IMG/VR virus record: IMGVR_UViG_3300036770_003943
Coordinates: 1-64,000 of that record
Strand: one strand, 5' to 3'
Length of the DNA stretch: 64,000 nucleotides
Shown here: positions 36,839 through 43,300 of the stretch, piece by piece
How the letters are laid out: the number at the start of each line of letters is the position of its first letter
Position numbering within the stretch: the stretch's first letter is position 1
Position numbers and translations under genes: made by a program
The notes under the pieces: model-generated
Told to the model about the DNA's origin: nothing
Seen by the model: the letters and a program-made list of their open reading frames with translations, nothing else
Databases searched by the model: none

Positions 36839-38941
36839 TTAGAATACTTTGTTAAACATTACACCAGCACCAGTAGCAGTATTACCTGCTTGCCCTGCTA
36901 CATTATATTGTCTGGCCAGGTTCACTGTCAATCTTGCGTTTTGATTATTAATCACAGTGTAACCTAATACTAGATCCAAAGGACGAATATCTGATTTCAG
37001 ATTCACAATTTCCTTAGTTACAATAGGATCCGCACTAACTGTACCATCAGCCAATTCAGTAAACTTGTAATCTGTTACTGCGCTCACAGTAGCTGAACCA
37101 TTCTTAATGGCAACCGGACTAACTAAGCTAAGACTAACTTGATCTCGAACACTATCTTTGAATACTATATTGTGATGCGCTATACCAACCTTCCAAGTCT
37201 GGCTAGTAATAGCCCCATTGAATTGGACAAGACTACCACTTAGGTTACTGACCTGCGTAACAGCCAAACCATAATGGCCAAACAAACTTGTATCACCAAA
37301 CTGTCGGGCTAGCCCTAATTGGGCATAACTAGTGCTGCTGTCACCATAGGCTAGACTACCTGCTCCGTGATTACCCAAAAAGCCTGAACGTTCAGACAAG
37401 CCTCCGAGTTGGAAACTCGCTGTAGTTGAACCCATATAGTAATCTACTTGGTTAGCTAAACCGTTATCAGACTTCATTAATTTTACTGAGTAGTCAGAGC
37501 CTGTGGGCAATACAACTTCACTATAGTTATAGGGTGTTAAGGCTAACCAAGCACTGCCGTATTGGTAAGTTTGTAGTTTATTTACAGCAGTAGCTTTAGT
37601 CAAATCAACTGCGTAATGACGCCCAATTTCATCTAAAGTCATTGTATTCTTTAATACATAACTGTTGGATAATCCTGTGTTAACTGAATTTACTGTACCT
37701 GTTCCAGCAATGCTAGAACCTGCTACTAGCCCTTGACTAGGCATGGCCATTTTTAATGTACCTGTTGGCTTAGTTGCCTGGCTGAAGTTGACTAACCCAT
37801 ATCCATAAACTTCATCAACGCCAGGGGCACCTAAATCTGTAGCAGTAGTCTTAACTAGACTGACAATCTGTGCCGCACTAAGTTGTGGCCAAACCTGTTT
37901 GATTAGTGCAACACCCCCACTGACATAGGCAGCGGCCGGACTTGTACCAGAGACATAACTTGTCACACTTCCTGGAATAATCTGGTTTGGAGTTGCGGTG
38001 GGAATATTTTCTCCTGGTGCTACTACGTAAAAATCTTTTACACTGTATTTGTCGGCACAAACTGTGCCTTGTACGTCAGAACAAAAGCCCCCAGCCCGGT
38101 TGCTAAAACTGCTAATTACATTCTTGTTATTCACACTACCTACAATCAGCATCCTGCCTCCTAACATAAGGTTACCTACTGAATCGGTTTTAGTAGCATA
38201 AGCACCCGGATATTGGCTATAAGCCAAGCCTTGGTTGCCTGCCGCGGCAACTATTACCATGGTCTTACTAGCATTGGCAAAATTTGCCAAGTCTTGGGCC
38301 GAGTTACTGTATAAGTCTGTATACGGAGCAGGAGCCTTGTATACTCCTGGAGACATTTTTATTACTCCACGCTGAAACGCAGTGTCATAAGTGGCGCCTA
38401 AACTTAGATTTGCTACAGTAGCACCGTTAGCTTCGGCCCAAGTTAATGCTTGATTGATGCCGTTTGTGCTAATACCATTAGTAACAGGAACCCATTTTTT
38501 CTGGTAATTATTCCAAACTAACCCTTGTGCGACCTGAGCCAGTAATAACTTAGCTCCAGGTGCTACGCCTACCGTTCCAATATTATCCAACTTACCTGCC
38601 GCCACTGCCGCCATCTGCGTTCCATGTGTACTCCAGCTAGCTGTGAAGAAAAGATTTGAACGAAAATTATTTGGATTAAGGCGAGTGTTTTCAGCTACAA
38701 TTTCACTAAAGTTTCTAAATCCTAATACCTGACCTCTAAGGTCATTATGAGTAATATCAAACCCACTGTCTAGTATAGCAATCTTAACACCGGTTCCAGT
38801 AATACCTCGACTCCATGCTTCTGTTACACCGGTTTGGTTTAACACCGATGTGCTTAGTGATTCTTTATTTGCCTGAGCTAGCACACTTTGACTAATTGCC
38901 AAAGCTATCGATACGCTAAGAACTTTTGCTTTAAATTTCAT
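36839..38941 (-). CDS. Secreted subtilisin-like (S8) serine protease with C-terminal beta-rich domain
   Basis: Signal peptide; AILDSG (Asp), HGTQMA (His), AAAGN, SGTS.AA..VSG (Ser); terminal Phe. Confidence 0.92.
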   Translation of the reverse strand: MKFKAKVLSVSIALAISQSVLAQANKESLSTSVLNQTGVTEAWSRGITGTGVKIAILDSGFDITHNDLRGQVLGFRNFSEIVAENTRLNPNNFRSNLFFTASWSTHGTQMAAVAAGKLDNIGTVGVAPGAKLLLAQVAQGLVWNNYQKKWVPVTNGISTNGINQALTWAEANGATVANLSLGATYDTAFQRGVIKMSPGVYKAPAPYTDLYSNSAQDLANFANASKTMVIVAAAGNQGLAYSQYPGAYATKTDSVGNLMLGGRMLIVGSVNNKNVISSFSNRAGGFCSDVQGTVCADKYSVKDFYVVAPGENIPTATPNQIIPGSVTSYVSGTSPAAAYVSGGVALIKQVWPQLSAAQIVSLVKTTATDLGAPGVDEVYGYGLVNFSQATKPTGTLKMAMPSQGLVAGSSIAGTGTVNSVNTGLSNSYVLKNTMTLDEIGRHYAVDLTKATAVNKLQTYQYGSAWLALTPYNYSEVVLPTGSDYSVKLMKSDNGLANQVDYYMGSTTASFQLGGLSERSGFLGNHGAGSLAYGDSSTSYAQLGLARQFGDTSLFGHYGLAVTQVSNLSGSLVQFNGAITSQTWKVGIAHHNIVFKDSVRDQVSLSLVSPVAIKNGSATVSAVTDYKFTELADGTVSADPIVTKEIVNLKSDIRPLDLVLGYTVINNQNARLTVNLARQYNVAGQAGNTATGAGVMFNKVF

Positions 38942-38955
38942 AAATTATCCTTAAT

Positions 38956-38976
38956 AAAAAGGGCAGTTTCCTGCCC
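38956..38976 (-). terminator. Intrinsic terminator between AAA ATPase and subtilase
   Basis: GGGCAG-GAAA-CTGCCC followed by TTTTT. Confidence 0.75.
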
Positions 38977-38982
38977 ATAAAA

Positions 38983-40062
38983 CTATGCTTCCTTACGCTT
39001 AAGGATTGTAGTTTCTGCGAGACGTCTCCAATTGCTAGGACTAAGTTTACGTAAGTCCGCAATCTTAAGCACTGTACGCAAACTGAGTTCACGCAAGCGA
39101 CTACGCTCTGTCCAAACAAAGTCAACAATTTCCTGATCTGCACCATCTTCAAAATTGTACGAGTTCAACATGCCATCACGCACAATCTGCTTGATACGCA
39201 AAAACTTGTCACGCATAGTGTCAAGTGTAAGATCCAGATAGTGACAACGACTTTCTAATGCGTCCAAATGGTCCTTGAGTTTCTTGCTACGAACATGCTC
39301 AAACTTAATGTTAGTAATAAAAATCACACTACCTTTGAACTCAAACTTGTCGGGCACACCTTCACGACGCAACATGCTGGAGTCTGTGTTCCAACTAATG
39401 GTACGCTTCTTGCTTGAATCCAATGCTGCCTTGAGGATGTTAAGTGACAAGTCGTCAAGCAAAATGCTGTCGCAGTCATCAAACACTAGAACATTGTTTT
39501 TGTCTGCGTATTGAAACAACTTGCAGTAGAGTCCAATAGCACTCATAGCACCTTTGACTACTTCAAAGCGATTTTTACGCTGAGCCATTTTGTCAAAGAG
39601 GCTGGCCTGTTCAAGTACCTTCTCAACACCAAAACTCTTGCCAACTCCTGGGGGACCTGACACAATCATTGCACGAACGGCACCTGTAGTTGCACCTTCT
39701 GCCATTTCATCTAGAATGTCAAAACGCTCACGAATTCGTTCAATCGCTTGTTCTTCTGTTTCTGTATATGTTGCGGGTTCGACTGCCTTGAGCATTTGAA
39801 AGACATTATCGTCTTCTTTGTTAGCACGATTGCGTTCACTGTCTGACATGTCTACGATACTTTGTCCGCTCAACGTAATATCCTCACGTGAATTAATTTT
39901 GATTTTGACTTCTGCTGGGAAGCCAGGAAAGTTTCCTTCGTTAGCTACCTTAATAACAAAGCCACCTTTTGCGCTATCTTTGATATCGCCAAGTAAGCGA
40001 AAAGTTTGACCACGAACATCTATGTTACGATAACTGCCACGAAGAACGGTAACTTGAGCCAT
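38983..40062 (-). CDS. AAA+ ATPase
   Basis: GPPGVGKS Walker A, VLVFDDCD Walker B, VIFITN sensor 1, LESRC arginine finger. Confidence 0.88.
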   Translation of the reverse strand: MAQVTVLRGSYRNIDVRGQTFRLLGDIKDSAKGGFVIKVANEGNFPGFPAEVKIKINSREDITLSGQSIVDMSDSERNRANKEDDNVFQMLKAVEPATYTETEEQAIERIRERFDILDEMAEGATTGAVRAMIVSGPPGVGKSFGVEKVLEQASLFDKMAQRKNRFEVVKGAMSAIGLYCKLFQYADKNNVLVFDDCDSILLDDLSLNILKAALDSSKKRTISWNTDSSMLRREGVPDKFEFKGSVIFITNIKFEHVRSKKLKDHLDALESRCHYLDLTLDTMRDKFLRIKQIVRDGMLNSYNFEDGADQEIVDFVWTERSRLRELSLRTVLKIADLRKLSPSNWRRLAETTILKRKEA

Positions 40063-40125
40063 TTTCAAAACTCCTGTTTTGTTTAACTATAGAGCTAGTA
40101 TAACACTCTAGCCAATTTGTGTCAA

Positions 40126-40323
40126 TTAAACTACCAATTCATCGCTGTCAACGAGCACACGAGTTGTGGGCTCTGACCTCCAACGGAGTTGGACGGGCTT
40201 GTCCAGGACAACTGTATACTGGACCTTACCACCGTATTTTACACGACTGGATTCAACCAGGCCCGAAACTGTATTACCATGGTAGTTAGCAGTAACTTGC
40301 TCGCCGTCTTTGATCCAACCCAT
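40126..40323 (-). CDS. Small early protein (SH3-like beta fold)
   Basis: Own promoter and AAGGAG RBS. Confidence 0.8.
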   Translation of the reverse strand: MGWIKDGEQVTANYHGNTVSGLVESSRVKYGGKVQYTVVLDKPVQLRWRSEPTTRVLVDSDELVV

Positions 40324-40400
40324 TTAGTGCTCCTTGTTGCTGTCTATGTGTATATTATAACAAATCGGCTAATTCTGGTCAACCAAAATCTGTGTTGTTT

Positions 40401-40610
40401 TTACGCCACAAAATCAAAGATGTAGCCATAGGAGCCATCTGGGCTGATCTGAACCTTGCCCACGCCGTAGTCCTTGCTCAACCGGTGAAACACCTTGCGG
40501 GCTTCAGCTTCGGTGCAAACCACTGACAGCGAACCACAAAAGAAACTAGCCGCATTGTCCTGCTTGAGCACCTTAGCGACCTTGTCCAACACCACTGCTT
40601 CAAATCCCAT
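40401..40610 (-). CDS. Small early protein
   Basis: ATG at 40610 after AAGGAG; own promoter. Confidence 0.8.
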   Translation of the reverse strand: MGFEAVVLDKVAKVLKQDNAASFFCGSLSVVCTEAEARKVFHRLSKDYGVGKVQISPDGSYGYIFDFVA

Positions 40611-40669
40611 TTGCTGCTCCTTGTTATTTACTATACCTACAGTATACAATCTTGTCCAATTTGTGTCAA

Positions 40670-40891
40670 TTAAAGTGACACGCAGTGCCAGCCTTCACGC
40701 TCAATTTTACGACGTGCTTCTAACATAGTCTGGCGCAATTTTGCCACTTCTGGAGTAAACGGTGCTGCGAGTCCACCCAATTGCTGTAATTTAAGCAGAG
40801 CAGCATCACGACGCTGATAGGTCTTGACAGCAATCTCAGGCACTAAAAACTTACGATTTGATAACGCTGGGCTGGTATAAACTACTTTCAT
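40670..40891 (-). CDS. Small basic early protein
   Basis: ATG at 40891 after AAGGAG; own promoter. Confidence 0.8.
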   Translation of the reverse strand: MKVVYTSPALSNRKFLVPEIAVKTYQRRDAALLKLQQLGGLAAPFTPEVAKLRQTMLEARRKIEREGWHCVSL

Positions 40892-40950
40892 CTCTTGCTC
40901 CTTGTTTTTCACTATACCTATAGTATATAACCGAGACCAATTTGTGTCAA

Positions 40951-41373
40951 TTATTCTACCGTGTAGGGACGATTCCACGTACCGATATTGACGTCAACGT
41001 ACCAGCCCACATCGAAGTAATCCGTTTGAATGTCCGAATTATCATGGTTTCCATCGTTCATAGCGGGCATCAATTCTTGTAGAAACTTGAGTGCTTTACC
41101 GCTAAAATGGTCCTGATACCAGTAGGGATTGACGTCAATAGCCTGCTTGTCACGCAGGTATTTTACTCTGTCGGGTTCCATTTGGGAGCCGTAGGGCTTG
41201 GTAGTAAGGGTGGTAATATAATTTTCTACGAAGTCAATCTTGCCGCTCTTAATTTTGAGCATGAGAGTTGAATGGTTACGTACTGACAGTGAGCCTTTTA
41301 CGCCGTATTTTTTCAATACTGCTTTGATTTTTGGGGCTAATTTTGCCTTGCGTTCTTGACTGATATAAGCCAT
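40951..41373 (-). CDS. LPD29-like (large polyvalent protein-associated) domain protein
   Basis: SD.QTDYFDVGWY motif; K...G.K.S.S....S.L N-terminus. Confidence 0.6.
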   Translation of the reverse strand: MAYISQERKAKLAPKIKAVLKKYGVKGSLSVRNHSTLMLKIKSGKIDFVENYITTLTTKPYGSQMEPDRVKYLRDKQAIDVNPYWYQDHFSGKALKFLQELMPAMNDGNHDNSDIQTDYFDVGWYVDVNIGTWNRPYTVE

Positions 41374-41382
41374 CGTCTGCTC

Positions 41383-41466
41383 CTAGAGGTACTTGAAAAT
41401 ATTGACAATTAATACTAAACTTCCTGATCCAACAATGCCTACTGTGAAGTCTTTTATGTCCTGCAT
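41383..41466 (-). CDS. 27-aa membrane peptide
   Basis: MQDIKDFTVGIVGSGSLVLIVNIFKYL; first ORF after promoter, its stop overlaps the next RBS. Confidence 0.5.
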   Translation of the reverse strand: MQDIKDFTVGIVGSGSLVLIVNIFKYL

Positions 41467-41524
41467 AACTATATCTTTATTTACACTATACCTATAGTAT
41501 ACGGATCTTCCCAATTTGTGTCAA

Positions 41525-41986
41525 TTAACCCAACGTAGTGTCTTCCATGCCTGCGACCCTAAGTTTTGTGATATTGTTAATTTGGAAGGATTTACTATCG
41601 ATGGCTTTCATAAGCCCTAAAAACTTATTTCTAACCATGGCAAATTCGTTGATTAATAGCTGCCATTCATAAACTTCTGGGTCTCCGTCAACATAGCGAT
41701 CAGCGTCTCTACTAGTTAATGCTCTATTATATGTTTCAGTATATTTCTTAAAGGTGTCACTGCGCCGACGTCTAAGTTGTATATTAAGATATTCTAATAT
41801 AGCTTCAATTTCTTGAAGTTGGTTAAACCGATGTTCGACTATGCCTGGCATTAGTCTGGCATTCATTTCTAGATTACCTTTAAGACTTGTTTCTATCCTA
41901 GCACTAAGTATCTCAGATTCGAAATAGGCAATAGCATCGGGCAATAGTTCAATATTTCCCGTTACTTTTCGATACCAGTCACTCAT
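41525..41986 (-). CDS. uvsY: Recombination mediator UvsY-like
   Basis: Helical 153 aa, Y.R.L..RD...YVDGD, next to uvsX. Confidence 0.7.
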   Translation of the reverse strand: MSDWYRKVTGNIELLPDAIAYFESEILSARIETSLKGNLEMNARLMPGIVEHRFNQLQEIEAILEYLNIQLRRRRSDTFKKYTETYNRALTSRDADRYVDGDPEVYEWQLLINEFAMVRNKFLGLMKAIDSKSFQINNITKLRVAGMEDTTLG

Positions 41987-42243
41987 TGATCATCGTAATC
42001 GTAATTATCTTCTTCGTAACTGTCTTCTTCTGCAAAATTTTCAACAGCGTACAAATCTTTAATAACGGTATCTAGAACTGCGTCTGTGCCTAACAGTTCT
42101 TCACTTACACTATCCATATCATAGTGATTTTCCAAGCTGCGAAGAAACGCATTAGCAGCATCATATCTTTCTTTTTTATCAATATAACTCTTTACACTCG
42201 CCCAAACATCAGCAATCAAATTAACTTCATCATCATGTAGCAT
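41983..42243 (-). CDS. Hypothetical acidic protein
   Basis: 86-aa ORF coupled to uvsX/uvsY. Confidence 0.75.
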   Translation of the reverse strand: MLHDDEVNLIADVWASVKSYIDKKERYDAANAFLRSLENHYDMDSVSEELLGTDAVLDTVIKDLYAVENFAEEDSYEEDNYDYDDQ

Positions 42244-43300
42244 CCACAGTCTCCTTGGTCGTGTCTGCTTTATTTACATTAGATGCTAAATCTCTTAGCA
42301 TTATGTCTGCCATTACTCGATCTAACATTTCACCAGTCCATGCTTTGCGAAATGCTTTGTCTGTGTTGCCATCTTTATAGGTATAAACGTAGCTGTTGCC
42401 TTCACGTTTAAGCTGACCTTTTTCTTCGAGCATGTCAAAAAGGCCGCTGTATGGATCCATTCCAGTGGAATAGGGAATTTTGACTTGTACACTTTCAAAA
42501 GGTTTAGCATAGCGTGTTTTCATAACTTTACAAGCAGCTCTAATTCCATTTACTTCACTAGTTTTATTGCCGTCTTCATCTTCTTTCAATTTGAGTTTTC
42601 GCATGGCAACTACAATACTACTGGCGTAAATAAAGCCTTGGCCTCCGCTAATTTTATCGTCTGGATCAAACATATCTTGACTAGCGTAGGTGTGGTTGGT
42701 AGCTACTAATCCCACATTGTGACTACCAAACATATTTACACAGTTACGTACCAGTGCGGTTAGTGCTTTGGGTTTACGACCCATATCACCTTTAAGGTCG
42801 CCTGCGTCAAACTGATTAACATCTGTAGGAGTCAGCAACATGCCTAGGCTGTCAATAATAAACAAAACTTTTGGCCGATCTGTTACAGGCAATTCTTTGT
42901 AGTCAGCAATAAACTTGCTAATGGTCTTGGCCACATCGTCAATCATGGCCATGTTAAGTTTGAGCAACTTGTCATCGGCAGTGCTGACTCCCAGGGCGTG
43001 TAACCATGCCTCGTCTAAGGCATTTTCACTGTCAACTAATACTACAAAGATACCCTGTTCTTGGGCGTGTCGCACAAGGTTGCCTGAACAGATATAACTT
43101 TTACCTGCTCCACTTTCACCAGCGAACACTGTGACCTTACCCAATGGAACTCCTTTGAAAAAGTCTCCACTGATAAGATAATTCAGTGTATAGTTGCCAG
43201 TGCTGATCCAATCTGTAGGATCGTTAAAACCAATACTAAGGCCGTCAATGGCCTTGGTTAAATCTTTTCTAAATTTGCTTACATCAAACGGGCGTGTCAT
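42233..43300 (-). CDS. uvsX: RecA-like recombinase UvsX
   Basis: STG...LN..ISG, GESGAGKS, DSE.A, IDSLG, SGG.G..YASS. Confidence 0.95.
   Translation of the reverse strand: MTRPFDVSKFRKDLTKAIDGLSIGFNDPTDWISTGNYTLNYLISGDFFKGVPLGKVTVFAGESGAGKSYICSGNLVRHAQEQGIFVVLVDSENALDEAWLHALGVSTADDKLLKLNMAMIDDVAKTISKFIADYKELPVTDRPKVLFIIDSLGMLLTPTDVNQFDAGDLKGDMGRKPKALTALVRNCVNMFGSHNVGLVATNHTYASQDMFDPDDKISGGQGFIYASSIVVAMRKLKLKEDEDGNKTSEVNGIRAACKVMKTRYAKPFESVQVKIPYSTGMDPYSGLFDMLEEKGQLKREGNSYVYTYKDGNTDKAFRKAWTGEMLDRVMADIMLRDLASNVNKADTTKETVDAT

What the first reader, a model, noticed from the sequence alone, without database searches (positions are those of the whole stretch)
40063..41527. Zero-gap promoter-RBS-ORF cassette array of early genes
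Four promoters share the exact 14-mer TTGACACAAATTGG, a 17-nt spacer and TATACT. In all four the -35 box starts at the base immediately after the TAA of the upstream gene (41525, 40951, 40670, 40126). Downstream they share a TATAGT element, and three units in the array use an AACAAGGAGCA RBS. Each unit is a self-contained expression cassette carrying a small unknown gene (including an LPD29-like one), and the repeats could act as recombination joints for shuffling anti-host genes, as proposed for promoter-repeat modules in T4-type hypervariable regions.
Basis: partly seen in the sequence, partly recalled or inferred. Interest (0 to 1): 0.6.

Follow-up and report, generated by a model that had tools for sequence, protein, structure and literature searches.

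The report
Promoter-linked swappable gene cassettes in phage
A giant uncultured phage keeps a row of small unknown genes, each joined to the next by the same ~59-base stop-codon–promoter–ribosome-site linker, and close relatives differ by whole genes gained, lost or replaced exactly at these linkers, a tidier variant of the promoter-mediated gene shuffling already known from T4-type phages.

Summary
On the minus strand, four exact TTGACACAAATTGG boxes each start on the base after a TAA. Each TAA is the real stop of the upstream gene. A 17-nt spacer, TATACT, a TATAGT five bases on, and a ribosome site follow.

The window is the first 64 kb of a 232-kb fragment of a ~330-kb jumbo phage; PA5oct is its nearest cultured relative, and a distant one. 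The array lies between the UvsY-like gene and an AAA ATPase gene.

In about 25 related contigs this frame is conserved. The interval between the two genes varies from 252 to 2444 bp, holds 0–5 cassettes, and draws on at least 25 unrelated ORF families.

Near-identical relatives (96–97% protein identity in g140) show three discrete events, all with breakpoints inside linkers:
- a 287-bp cassette indel flanked by AACAAGGAGCA direct repeats;
- replacement of one ORF, from just after the −10 box to the TAA/−35 junction;
- a leader swap that carries a 27-codon ORF.

Circles, promoter activity and an anti-host role remain untested.

The closest known system is the PeSL of T4-type phages. The linkers here lack its stem-loop and have a fixed zero-gap stop/−35 fusion, which is rare in RB49 (1 of 22). 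I rate it a new variant of a known kind. The "LPD29-like" label is not supported by Pfam.

The parts
41525..41986 (-). UvsY-like recombination mediator gene. Conserved left anchor of the variable region. Its TAA (41525-41527) abuts the first -35 box.
   Evidence: phrog_231 at 1e-17 and Pfam UvsY at 4.5e-4. Conserved at 61-86% in L006-L033.
41467..41527 (-). Linker P1: TAA 41525-27, -35 TTGACA 41519-24, CAAATTGG box, -10 TATACT 41496-41501, TATAGT 41485-90. The leader has no clear SD in this genome.
   Evidence: In L006 the leader after TATACTA is a different 19-nt sequence without the small ORF.
41383..41466 (-). g27: a 27-codon hydrophobic mini-ORF (MQDIKDFTVGIVGSGSLVLIVNIFKYL). Its TAG overlaps the SD of g140.
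   Evidence: Conserved with conservative changes and a GAGG SD in L086 and L088. Absent in L006 and L007.
40951..41373 (-). g140: cassette gene of a very large phage family of unknown function.
   Evidence: phrog_10415 at 2e-43. More than 5000 90%-clusters and 1427 50%-clusters. dN/dS 0.03-0.12. AF2 pLDDT 95.6 with no PDB fold match. Some relatives are fused N-terminally to methyltransferase + DUF4942.
40892..40953 (-). Linker P2, 59 nt between stop and ATG: TAA 40951-53, -35 40945-50, -10 40922-27, TATAGT 40911-16, RBS AACAAGGAGCA 40896-906.
   Evidence: Only 4-5 mismatches in 65 nt against L006/L007, while flanking synonymous sites differ by 51-60%.
40670..40891 (-). g73: cassette ORFan.
   Evidence: No Pfam, PHROG or PADLOC hit. 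dN/dS 0.06-0.15. The L006 allele is only 59% identical inside otherwise 85-90% flanks.
40611..40672 (-). Linker P3, 59 nt: TAA 40670-72, -35 40664-69, -10 40641-46, TATAGT 40630-35, RBS 40615-25. Left joint of the g69 indel.
40401..40610 (-). g69: cassette ORFan present here but absent from the closest relatives.
   Evidence: Absent in L088, L091, L006 and L007. A 44% homologue is the first cassette in L013/L016. The g69-less junction is seen in run X4.
40324..40400 (-). Non-canonical linker P5: an 18-nt gap after the g69 stop, then TTGACC 40377-82, 17 nt, TATAAT 40354-59, RBS AACAAGGAGCA 40328-38. Right joint of the 287-bp indel.
   Evidence: The segment 40376-40418 is shared with other contigs in three runs.
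40126..40323 (-). g65: cassette gene, predicted small SH3/Tudor-like beta-barrel.
   Evidence: Present in WIN, L006, L007, L088, L020 and L021. Replaced by an unrelated 82-aa ORF in L086. dN/dS 0.04-0.15. pLDDT 89.6.
40063..40128 (-). Linker P4, 63 nt: TAA 40126-28, -35 40120-25, -10 40097-102, TATAGT 40086-91, leader AAACAAAACAGGAGTTTTG. Orthologous in all relatives upstream of the AAA gene.
38983..40062 (-). AAA ATPase gene, a homologue of PA5oct gp126. Conserved right anchor.
   Evidence: phrog_1250 at 1e-85; Pfam AAA and AAA_16. 131 related loci. 44.7% identity to PA5oct.
38961..38976 (-). Terminator-like hairpin GGGCAGGAAACTGCCC followed by a T-run. It is the first terminator-like site downstream of the AAA gene; one weak 3-GC hairpin without a T-run also matches inside the array (40676-40690).

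Best explanation
This is a hyperplastic region of an uncultured ~330-kb jumbo phage. It sits between the UvsY-like gene and a conserved AAA ATPase gene. It is built from independent small-gene cassettes joined by one conserved linker of about 59 nt.

Linker anatomy, from stop to start:
- TAA, the stop of the upstream gene, fused without a gap to a sigma70-type -35 box;
- TTGACA followed by CAAATTGG;
- a variable 9-nt stretch;
- TATA(C/A)T;
- a conserved leader, ..TATAGT..AACAAGGAG;
- ATG.

How it most likely works:
1. Inferred from sequence and conservation: each linker is a strong host-RNA-polymerase promoter plus ribosome site, so every cassette is expressed on its own soon after infection. 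I found no convincing terminator between units, so transcription probably adds up along the array. It would run through the AAA gene to the hairpin at 38961-38976.
2. Shown by comparison; the mechanism itself is inferred: the linker is the only sequence shared by otherwise unrelated cassettes, and it runs exactly from stop codon to start codon. Homologous or microhomology-mediated recombination inside it inserts, deletes or replaces whole ORFs. Both neighbours keep their reading frames, a promoter and a ribosome site.

The linker therefore serves as both expression signal and recombination joint.

The cargo genes are real genes under purifying selection. Their functions are unknown; an early host-takeover or anti-defence role is only an analogy.
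For: Anatomy.

Conservation of the linker:
- 49 unique zero-gap linkers occur in the clade. Lengths are 53-63 nt (mode 59), the boxes are near-invariant and the spacer varies.
- 28 of 39 promoter hits in close relatives have zero gap to a real upstream stop, and all 28 use TAA. In the distant group the figure is 1 of 17, and that one uses TAG.
- In this genome, promoters that do not follow an ORF directly have no TAA at that position. Junction stops are 9/9 TAA, while the genome as a whole uses TAA 54% of the time. The TAA is therefore a stop codon fixed to the cassette, not a promoter base.
- Orthologous linkers differ by 6-8% where flanking synonymous sites differ by 51-65%.

Plasticity:
- The frame UvsX-g86-UvsY-[variable]-AAA-S8 is conserved. 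The interval is 252-2444 bp and holds at least 25 ORF families in mosaic order.

Breakpoints:
- A 287-bp g69 indel is flanked by the AACAAGGAGCA repeat.
- The g65 replacement in L086 runs from TATACTGTAGG| to AGTTTAA|TTGACA.
- The g27 leader swap runs from TATACTA| to |GGAGCAGA.
- Run X4, an independent sample, shows the g69-less and g27-less junctions.
- 54% of the ends of alignments of 150 nt or more lie in linkers, against 14.6% expected.

Other support:
- g140 occurs in other genomic contexts, again followed by a zero-gap promoter.
- No stable hairpin or conserved stem-loop lies in the linkers.
- Cargo genes show dN/dS of 0.03-0.15.
Against: Not tested directly:
- No transcription data exist. 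Promoter activity, start sites and 'early' timing are inferred from consensus and conservation only.
- Only assembled contigs could be laid, not raw reads. Circles and within-population recombinants could not be looked for.

Breakpoints are not always in linkers:
- The divergent g73 allele of L006 changes inside the ORF, about 20 nt after the ATG and about 45 nt before the stop.
- Roughly half of the long-alignment ends lie outside linkers. Those counts are not phylogenetically independent.

Other weaknesses:
- The repeat at the g69 indel is only 11 bp. Slippage or illegitimate joining followed by selection would give the same picture.
- Enrichment of surviving breakpoints between genes is partly expected from selection alone.
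Confidence: 0.72

Rival explanations
1. The linkers are only promoters and have no role in recombination. Rearrangements arise anywhere by illegitimate recombination. Selection keeps only those that leave ORFs and their signals intact, so surviving breakpoints appear to sit in linkers.
For: The microhomology at the g69 indel is only 11 bp. The g73 allele exchange in L006 has its ends inside the ORF. 46% of long-alignment ends lie outside linkers. Strong purifying selection on the linkers is explained by promoter function alone.
Against: All three events seen on a near-identical background (g69, g65, g27) have both ends inside linker sequence, at shared motifs. In L007 the spacer of the linker after g65 resembles that of the linker before it, as exchange between the two would give. 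Promoter-repeat recombination and circles were shown experimentally for the analogous PeSLs (PMC2839356).
Confidence: 0.18
2. The apparent shuffling is a metagenome assembly artefact. Contigs from different co-occurring phages were mis-joined at the repeated linkers.
For: In the probable source run, Logan contigs break at 40405-40434. Summed depth peaks at linker positions, showing that these stretches are shared by several genomes in the sample.
Against: The exact repeats are at most about 35 nt, shorter than reads. The order g140-g73-g65-AAA is recovered independently in several samples and collections (L006, L007, L088, L089, L091). In the source run one contig spans 39000-40434 and another spans 40405-42503, both with 0 mismatches, so both g69 junctions are covered. 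Flanking genes co-vary in divergence with the cassettes.
Confidence: 0.04
3. The array arose by tandem duplication of a single promoter-gene unit followed by divergence, so the repeats are relics of duplication and not functional joints.
For: The units are head to tail with near-identical linkers of fixed length.
Against: The ORFs of the array and of its relatives fall into at least 25 families with no detectable similarity between families. Spacers are conserved between orthologous linkers in different genomes, not homogenised within a genome. The same linker type occurs 138 kb away beside unrelated genes.
Confidence: 0.03
4. The conserved extras (CAAATTGG after the -35 box; TATAGT after the -10 box) mean that the linker is chiefly a regulatory site. 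It could be two overlapping promoters one helical turn apart, a sigma70-dependent promoter-proximal pause site, or an operator for a phage shut-off factor. Recombination would then be a by-product.
For: TTGGnn-18-TATAGT scores 9 of 12 as a second promoter at three of the four units. The -10-like element TATnGT is kept at the same offset across the clade. TATAC/GTATA and ACTATA/TATAGT are palindromic.
Against: Nothing here tests binding or pausing. This reading does not explain the zero-gap TAA or the cassette turnover, and it is compatible with the main explanation.
Confidence: 0.3

Closest known systems
PeSLs (promoter-early stem-loops) of T4-type phages: RB49/phi1, T4/PST, KVP40/nt-1 (Arbiol et al. 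2010, PMC2839356; Comeau et al. 2014, PMC4122927)
   Same: - Repeated sigma70-type promoter motifs of about 60-100 bp run from the upstream gene's stop codon to the downstream SD and start.
- They are concentrated in hyperplastic regions in front of ORFans.
- Insertions, deletions and replacements between close relatives map to them.
- They sit next to conserved replication/recombination genes.
   Different: - There is no stem-loop or terminator part.
- The stop codon is fused with zero gap to the -35 box. In RB49 the gap is mostly 3-16 nt, and zero in 1 of 22.
- Linker length is nearly fixed at 59 nt.
- Extra conserved boxes are present (CAAATTGG, TATAGT).
- The host phage is not a Straboviridae member but a ~330-kb jumbo phage. 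Its nearest cultured relative is PA5oct (Arenbergviridae), at 45% identity in the AAA protein.
- Mini-circles were not tested here.
Morons of lambdoid phages (promoter-gene-terminator units inserted between genes)
   Same: They are self-contained transcription units carrying accessory genes, inserted at gene boundaries and variable between relatives.
   Different: Morons carry their own terminator and are typically expressed from the prophage. They are not joined by one shared linker sequence that could itself act as the recombination joint.
Integron gene cassettes
   Same: They form arrays of single promoter-less or small ORFs bounded by a repeated joint. Whole ORFs are gained, lost and reordered at that joint.
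   Different: Integrons use a site-specific tyrosine recombinase, structured attC sites and one common promoter. Here there is no integrase nearby, every unit has its own promoter, and exchange is presumably by general or microhomology recombination.
Small-ORF cluster upstream of gp126 in Pseudomonas phage PA5oct
   Same: Four ORFs of 65-73 aa lie directly upstream of the homologous AAA gene. The phage uses host RNA polymerase and TTGAC/TATAATA promoters (PMC7318152).
   Different: In PA5oct the small ORFs overlap or abut each other, with no per-gene promoter linker.

Membership tests
PeSL (promoter-early stem-loop) regulatory cassette | Strong sigma70-like promoter (-35, about 17 nt, -10) | tested here: met
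   TTGACA-17-TATACT scores 11 of 12 in four units, and TTGACC-17-TATAAT in a fifth. The boxes are conserved and the spacer varies across the clade. This is sequence evidence only; activity was not measured.
PeSL (promoter-early stem-loop) regulatory cassette | Stable stem-loop acting as terminator or attenuator within the motif | tested here: not met
   MFE is -5 to -11 kcal/mol with z from +0.5 to -2.0. No G+C-rich stem with a T-run lies in any linker; the only site the terminator scan reports inside the array is a weak 3-GC hairpin in the 3' end of g73 with no T-run. The consensus fold of 15 orthologous linkers is -0.33 kcal/mol.
PeSL (promoter-early stem-loop) regulatory cassette | Motif begins with the upstream gene's stop codon in an AT-rich stretch and ends with the SD and start of the downstream gene | tested here: met
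   The stop codon is part of the motif, but with zero gap instead of an AT-rich spacer. The SD and ATG follow at a fixed distance.
PeSL (promoter-early stem-loop) regulatory cassette | Concentrated in hyperplastic regions, upstream of ORFans | tested here: met
   5 of the genome's 18 strong promoters lie in this 1.46-kb array. The cargo has no Pfam or functional PHROG hits. The region is hypervariable.
PeSL (promoter-early stem-loop) regulatory cassette | Indels and replacements between close relatives have their ends at the motifs | tested here: met
PeSL (promoter-early stem-loop) regulatory cassette | Recombination between neighbouring motifs yields mini-circles | not testable with these tools
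   Only assembled contigs were available. One ambiguous contig joint, 41373|GTCGTT|40898 at depth 3.2, is equally explained by a relative.
Pfam LPD29 (PF18847), for the 140-aa protein | Match to the family HMM above the gathering score (27 bits) | tested here: not met
   No hit at E<=10 by hmmscan or by a six-frame search of the genome. No Pfam domain is precomputed on 120 homologues. The only hint is an Atlas neighbour cluster in which 19% of members carry LPD29.

The most novel reading that the evidence does not exclude
The zero-gap TAA-promoter-RBS linker is a dedicated, clade-wide 'seamless joint'. Recombination between neighbouring linkers, perhaps by the adjacent UvsX/UvsY/gp32 machinery, would release ORF-plus-linker circles. 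These circles could re-insert at any other linker in this or a co-infecting phage, giving an integrase-free cassette exchange system. The conserved CAAATTGG and TATAGT boxes would serve a second, regulatory purpose, such as sigma-dependent pausing or a shut-off operator.
Probability: 0.2. Interest if true: 0.7.

Novelty: new variant of a known kind. Interest (0 to 1): 0.5.

Why it matters
It extends promoter-mediated modular shuffling, so far described only for T4-type Straboviridae, to an uncultured freshwater/aquaculture clade of ~330-kb jumbo phages. It does so in a stripped-down and very regular form: stop codon fused to the −35 box, a 59-nt linker, and no terminator.

The regularity gives a simple sequence signature (TAA|TTGACACAAATTGG…) for finding accessory-gene cassettes in metagenomic phage contigs. 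Such cassettes are the usual hiding place of host-takeover and anti-defence genes.

It also offers a natural, compact design for swappable expression cassettes.

The dozens of ORFan families that pass through this one locus are a ready-made candidate list for functional screens.

Tried and rejected
- Megablast of the locus against cultured phages found nothing. Only protein-level relatives exist; PA5oct is the best, at 44.7%.
- Function of the cargo genes. Pfam, PHROGs and PADLOC gave nothing useful for g27, g73, g69, g65 or ten cassettes from relatives. A PDB sequence search was blank.
  - g140 folds confidently (pLDDT 95.6) but has no fold match: Foldseek E>0.3 and VIA-align Z<=5.
  - g65 is a generic SH3/Tudor-like barrel.
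- LPD29 membership is rejected at the HMM level.
- A stem-loop or terminator in the linkers is rejected.
- Cassette families from relatives' arrays do not occur elsewhere in this genome. g65 is absent from five larger related genomes; g140 is present in one of them, at another position.
- Reads. Only Logan contigs were available, so no starts, no strand, no minor variants and no circle junctions could be assessed. The single 'go-back' joint is ambiguous.
- The first all-HSP breakpoint count was confounded by linker-to-linker hits. It was replaced by the count on alignments of 150 nt or more.
- The T4-type late promoter TATAAATA is not enriched, so I make no claim about a T4-like temporal programme.
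Full report
**What is there.** The window is the first 64 kb of a 231,776-bp linear IMG/VR virus record. CheckV rates it 65% complete and its G+C is 38.5%. Related records that are complete or nearly so are 328-332 kb.

Nearly all genes lie on the minus strand. Around the finding the order is: terminase large subunit, a virion protein, a gp32-type ssDNA-binding protein, a small ORF, UvsX-like recombinase, an 86-aa ORF, UvsY-like mediator, the array, an AAA ATPase, an S8 subtilase, and further on a DNA methyltransferase.

The nearest cultured relative by the AAA protein is Pseudomonas phage PA5oct (Arenbergviridae) at 44.7% identity. There is no nucleotide-level match to any cultured phage.

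**Check of the observation.**
- TTGACACAAATTGG occurs four times exactly on the minus strand, and no further copy appears with up to two mismatches. It occurs nowhere else exactly in the 232-kb record.
- Each copy is preceded directly by TAA, and each TAA is the genuine stop of an ORF of 65-153 codons.
- The spacer is 17 nt and the -10 box is TATACT in all four.
- TATAGT follows at a fixed 5-nt distance in all four.
- AACAAGGAGCA occurs three times.

- One of the three AACAAGGAGCA sites belongs to a fifth unit. Its promoter is different (TTGACC-17-TATAAT, 40382-40354) and lies 18 nt after the g69 stop, not at zero gap.
- The first promoter is followed by a 27-codon hydrophobic ORF (41383-41466). 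Its TAG overlaps the ribosome site of the 140-aa gene, so that gene has no promoter of its own.
- The 'LPD29-like' label is not reproduced by the Pfam model. The only hint is a language-model neighbour cluster in which 19% of members carry LPD29.

**The linker is a conserved, clade-wide element.** In this genome only 18 sites fit a profile of the strong promoter. Five of them lie in this 1.46-kb array and six in a second cluster at 175-180.5 kb.

The zero-gap junction of a real stop codon followed directly by TTGAC and a proper -10 box occurs nine times in the genome. All nine are on the minus strand and all use TAA. Long ORFs in this genome use TAA only 54% of the time. Promoters that do not follow an ORF directly have TTA, AAC, TAC, GTC, GGC, AGC or TGG at that position. 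The TAA is therefore a stop codon welded to the promoter, not a promoter base.

In contigs of the close clade (L006-L026), 28 of 39 promoter-profile hits have zero gap to a real upstream stop, and all 28 use TAA. In the more distant group the figure is 1 of 17, and that one uses TAG.

Forty-nine distinct zero-gap linkers from the clade give the consensus TAA TTGACA CAAATTGG n9 TATA(C/A)T aTAggtATAGTaAaaAAcaAGGAGc n6 ATG. The distance from stop to start is 53-63 nt, with a mode of 59.

The boxes are near-invariant while the 9-nt spacer is free, which is the footprint of a functional promoter. Orthologous linkers of the window and of L006/L007 differ at 6-8% of positions (17% for one). Synonymous sites of the flanking cassette genes differ at 51-65%.

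**No terminator part.** The linkers fold no better than shuffles: -5 to -11 kcal/mol, z from +0.5 to -2.0. The terminator scan reports no G+C-rich stem with a T-run in any linker. Its only site inside the array is a weak 3-GC hairpin in the 3' end of g73 with no T-run (40676-40690). The first convincing site is the hairpin at 38961-38976 just after the AAA gene. Fifteen orthologous AAA-upstream linkers have no conserved stem-loop, with a consensus energy of -0.33 kcal/mol. The only pairing is a small AAAAC/GTTTT helix with the SD in its loop.

**The region is hyperplastic.** A search with the AAA protein found 131 related loci. In L006-L033 the frame UvsX-g86-UvsY-[variable]-AAA(-S8) is kept. 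The UvsY-to-AAA distance runs from 252 to 2444 bp. The interval holds 0-5 cassettes drawn from at least 25 mutually unrelated ORF families in mosaic combinations:
- g65 occurs in the window, L006, L007, L020 and L021.
- g69 occurs in the window and in L013/L016.
- F10 occurs in L010 and L020.
- F1 occurs in six loci, next to different neighbours.

Nearly every cassette in the close clade is preceded by the same linker. The cargo genes are real: dN/dS is 0.03-0.15 for g140, g73 and g65.

**Breakpoints.** Contigs that encode g140 at 96-97% identity allow base-level comparison on an almost identical background.
1. g69 with its downstream non-canonical promoter is a 287-bp indel. L088, L091, L006 and L007 read ...TATACTGTAGGTATAGTAAAT-AACAAGGAGCAC-AAGATG(g65). 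In the window the same AACAAGGAGCA stands at both ends of the extra segment.
2. In L086, g65 is replaced by an unrelated 82-aa ORF. Identity stops at TATACTGTAGG| just after the -10 box and resumes at AGTTTAA|TTGACA, the stop/-35 junction.
3. The g27 leader is swapped between TATACTA| and |GGAGCAGA relative to L006. In L007 a 464-aa radical-SAM-like gene on the other strand sits at that position.

Contigs of an independent aquaculture metagenome (X4) carry the g69-less junction and the g27-less leader.

Over all non-redundant pairs of close loci, 54% of the internal ends of alignments of 150 nt or more lie in linkers, which make up 14.6% of the sequence. These counts are not phylogenetically independent.

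Two counter-examples: the divergent g73 allele of L006 changes inside the ORF ends, and about half of the alignment ends lie outside linkers.

g140 also occurs in quite different genomic contexts. There too it is followed by a zero-gap TAA|TTGACC promoter.

**Interpretation.** The simplest account is that the linker serves two purposes.

As a near-consensus sigma70 promoter with a strong SD, it gives each accessory gene its own expression by unmodified host polymerase. PA5oct is known to rely on the host polymerase and on TTGAC/TATAATA promoters (PMC7318152). With no convincing terminator between units, transcription probably accumulates towards the AAA gene.

As the only homology between unrelated cassettes, running precisely from stop codon to start codon, it lets recombination exchange whole ORFs without damaging either neighbour. 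The first part is inferred from sequence and conservation. The second is supported by the comparative breakpoints, but the mechanism is not shown. It could be homologous recombination, microhomology-mediated joining, or slippage, and circular intermediates may or may not be involved.

A selection-only reading remains possible. In it, random breaks occur anywhere and only intergenic ones survive. It explains the shared motifs at both ends of all three recent events less well.

Assembly artefact is unlikely. The exact repeats are about 35 nt or less, the same orders are recovered in several samples, and both g69 junctions are spanned by error-free contigs in the probable source run.

Tandem duplication is excluded by the lack of any similarity between cassette families.

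The extra conserved boxes might form a second promoter one helical turn downstream; TTGGnn-18-TATAGT scores 9 of 12. They might also be a sigma70-dependent pause element or an operator. None of these could be tested.

**Comparison with what is known.** The closest known system is the PeSL of T4-type phages (PMC2839356, PMC4122927). PeSLs are repeated promoter motifs that run from the upstream stop codon to the downstream SD. They are concentrated before ORFans in hyperplastic regions and mediate indels and replacements, and mini-circles have been demonstrated for them.

The present linkers share all of this except the stem-loop, which was tested and not met. They also differ in three further ways:
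- The stop/-35 gap is fixed at zero. By the same criteria, RB49 promoters sit mostly 3-16 nt after the stop, and only 1 of 22 is at zero.
- The linker length is nearly fixed.
- The host lineage is a jumbo phage outside Straboviridae.

In PA5oct the small ORFs upstream of the homologous AAA gene are packed without individual promoters. I therefore rate the array as working like a PeSL array but not as a PeSL in the strict sense: a new variant of a known kind.

**Cargo.** g140 belongs to a very large phage family, with 1427 clusters at 50% identity. In some proteins it is the N-terminal domain ahead of a methyltransferase and DUF4942. Its confident model has no known fold relative. g65 is a small SH3/Tudor-like barrel. 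Nothing supports or excludes an anti-defence role.

**Verdict.** The mechanism is partly inferred. Interest is moderate.

Noticed in passing
window 36839-38941 (-): A 700-aa Peptidase_S8 subtilase has an N-terminal signal peptide and a C-terminus ending ...MFNKVF. It is conserved directly downstream of the AAA gene in most relatives (41-59% identity). A secreted or outer-membrane-type protease is unusual cargo for a jumbo phage.
   Followed up: partly
G000 174000-182000 (locus L096), outside the window: A second cluster of six strong sigma70-type promoters. Two of them (178901, 180154) are zero-gap linkers nearly identical after the -10 box to those of the window. They lie among small ORFs next to a MoxR-like AAA ATPase and a VWA/metallopeptidase-like gene.
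   Followed up: partly
window 41383-41466 (-): The 27-codon hydrophobic ORF g27 is conserved in L086 and L088, where it has a GAGG ribosome site. In the window that site reads GATAT, so the ORF may be poorly translated or decaying here.
   Followed up: partly
window 40898 / 41373 (run X2): One low-depth contig joins the RBS end of linker P2 (40898), through six other letters, to the ATG of g140 (41373). This is either a relative with a canonical linker before g140 or a circle/tandem junction of the g140 cassette. Contigs cannot decide between them.
   Followed up: no
L007 2404-3798 (-): A 464-aa radical-SAM-like gene (phrog_14086, CxxxCxxC motif) lies on the opposite strand, inserted between UvsY and the g140 promoter in one relative.
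   Followed up: partly
L007 4538-4860: The spacer of the linker after g65 (gggtccggctg) resembles that of the linker before it (gggtcctgctg), unlike the orthologous linkers in other genomes. This may be sequence conversion between the two linkers flanking one cassette.
   Followed up: no
window 40063-40085 (-) and orthologues: The leader of the AAA gene keeps an AAAAC-AGGAG-TTTT(G) helix with the Shine-Dalgarno sequence in its loop across 15 relatives. The helix is weak, and two pairs show changes.
   Followed up: partly
G000 83934 and 89581 (-), outside the window: An identical stretch of at least 70 nt beginning TAATTGACATGGCTTCG occurs twice, 5.6 kb apart.
   Followed up: no
window 40376-40418: The 3' end of g69 plus the -35 region of its downstream promoter is shared with other contigs in three different runs, which then continue with different sequence. 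Divergent g69 homologues elsewhere appear to carry the same 3' flank.
   Followed up: no
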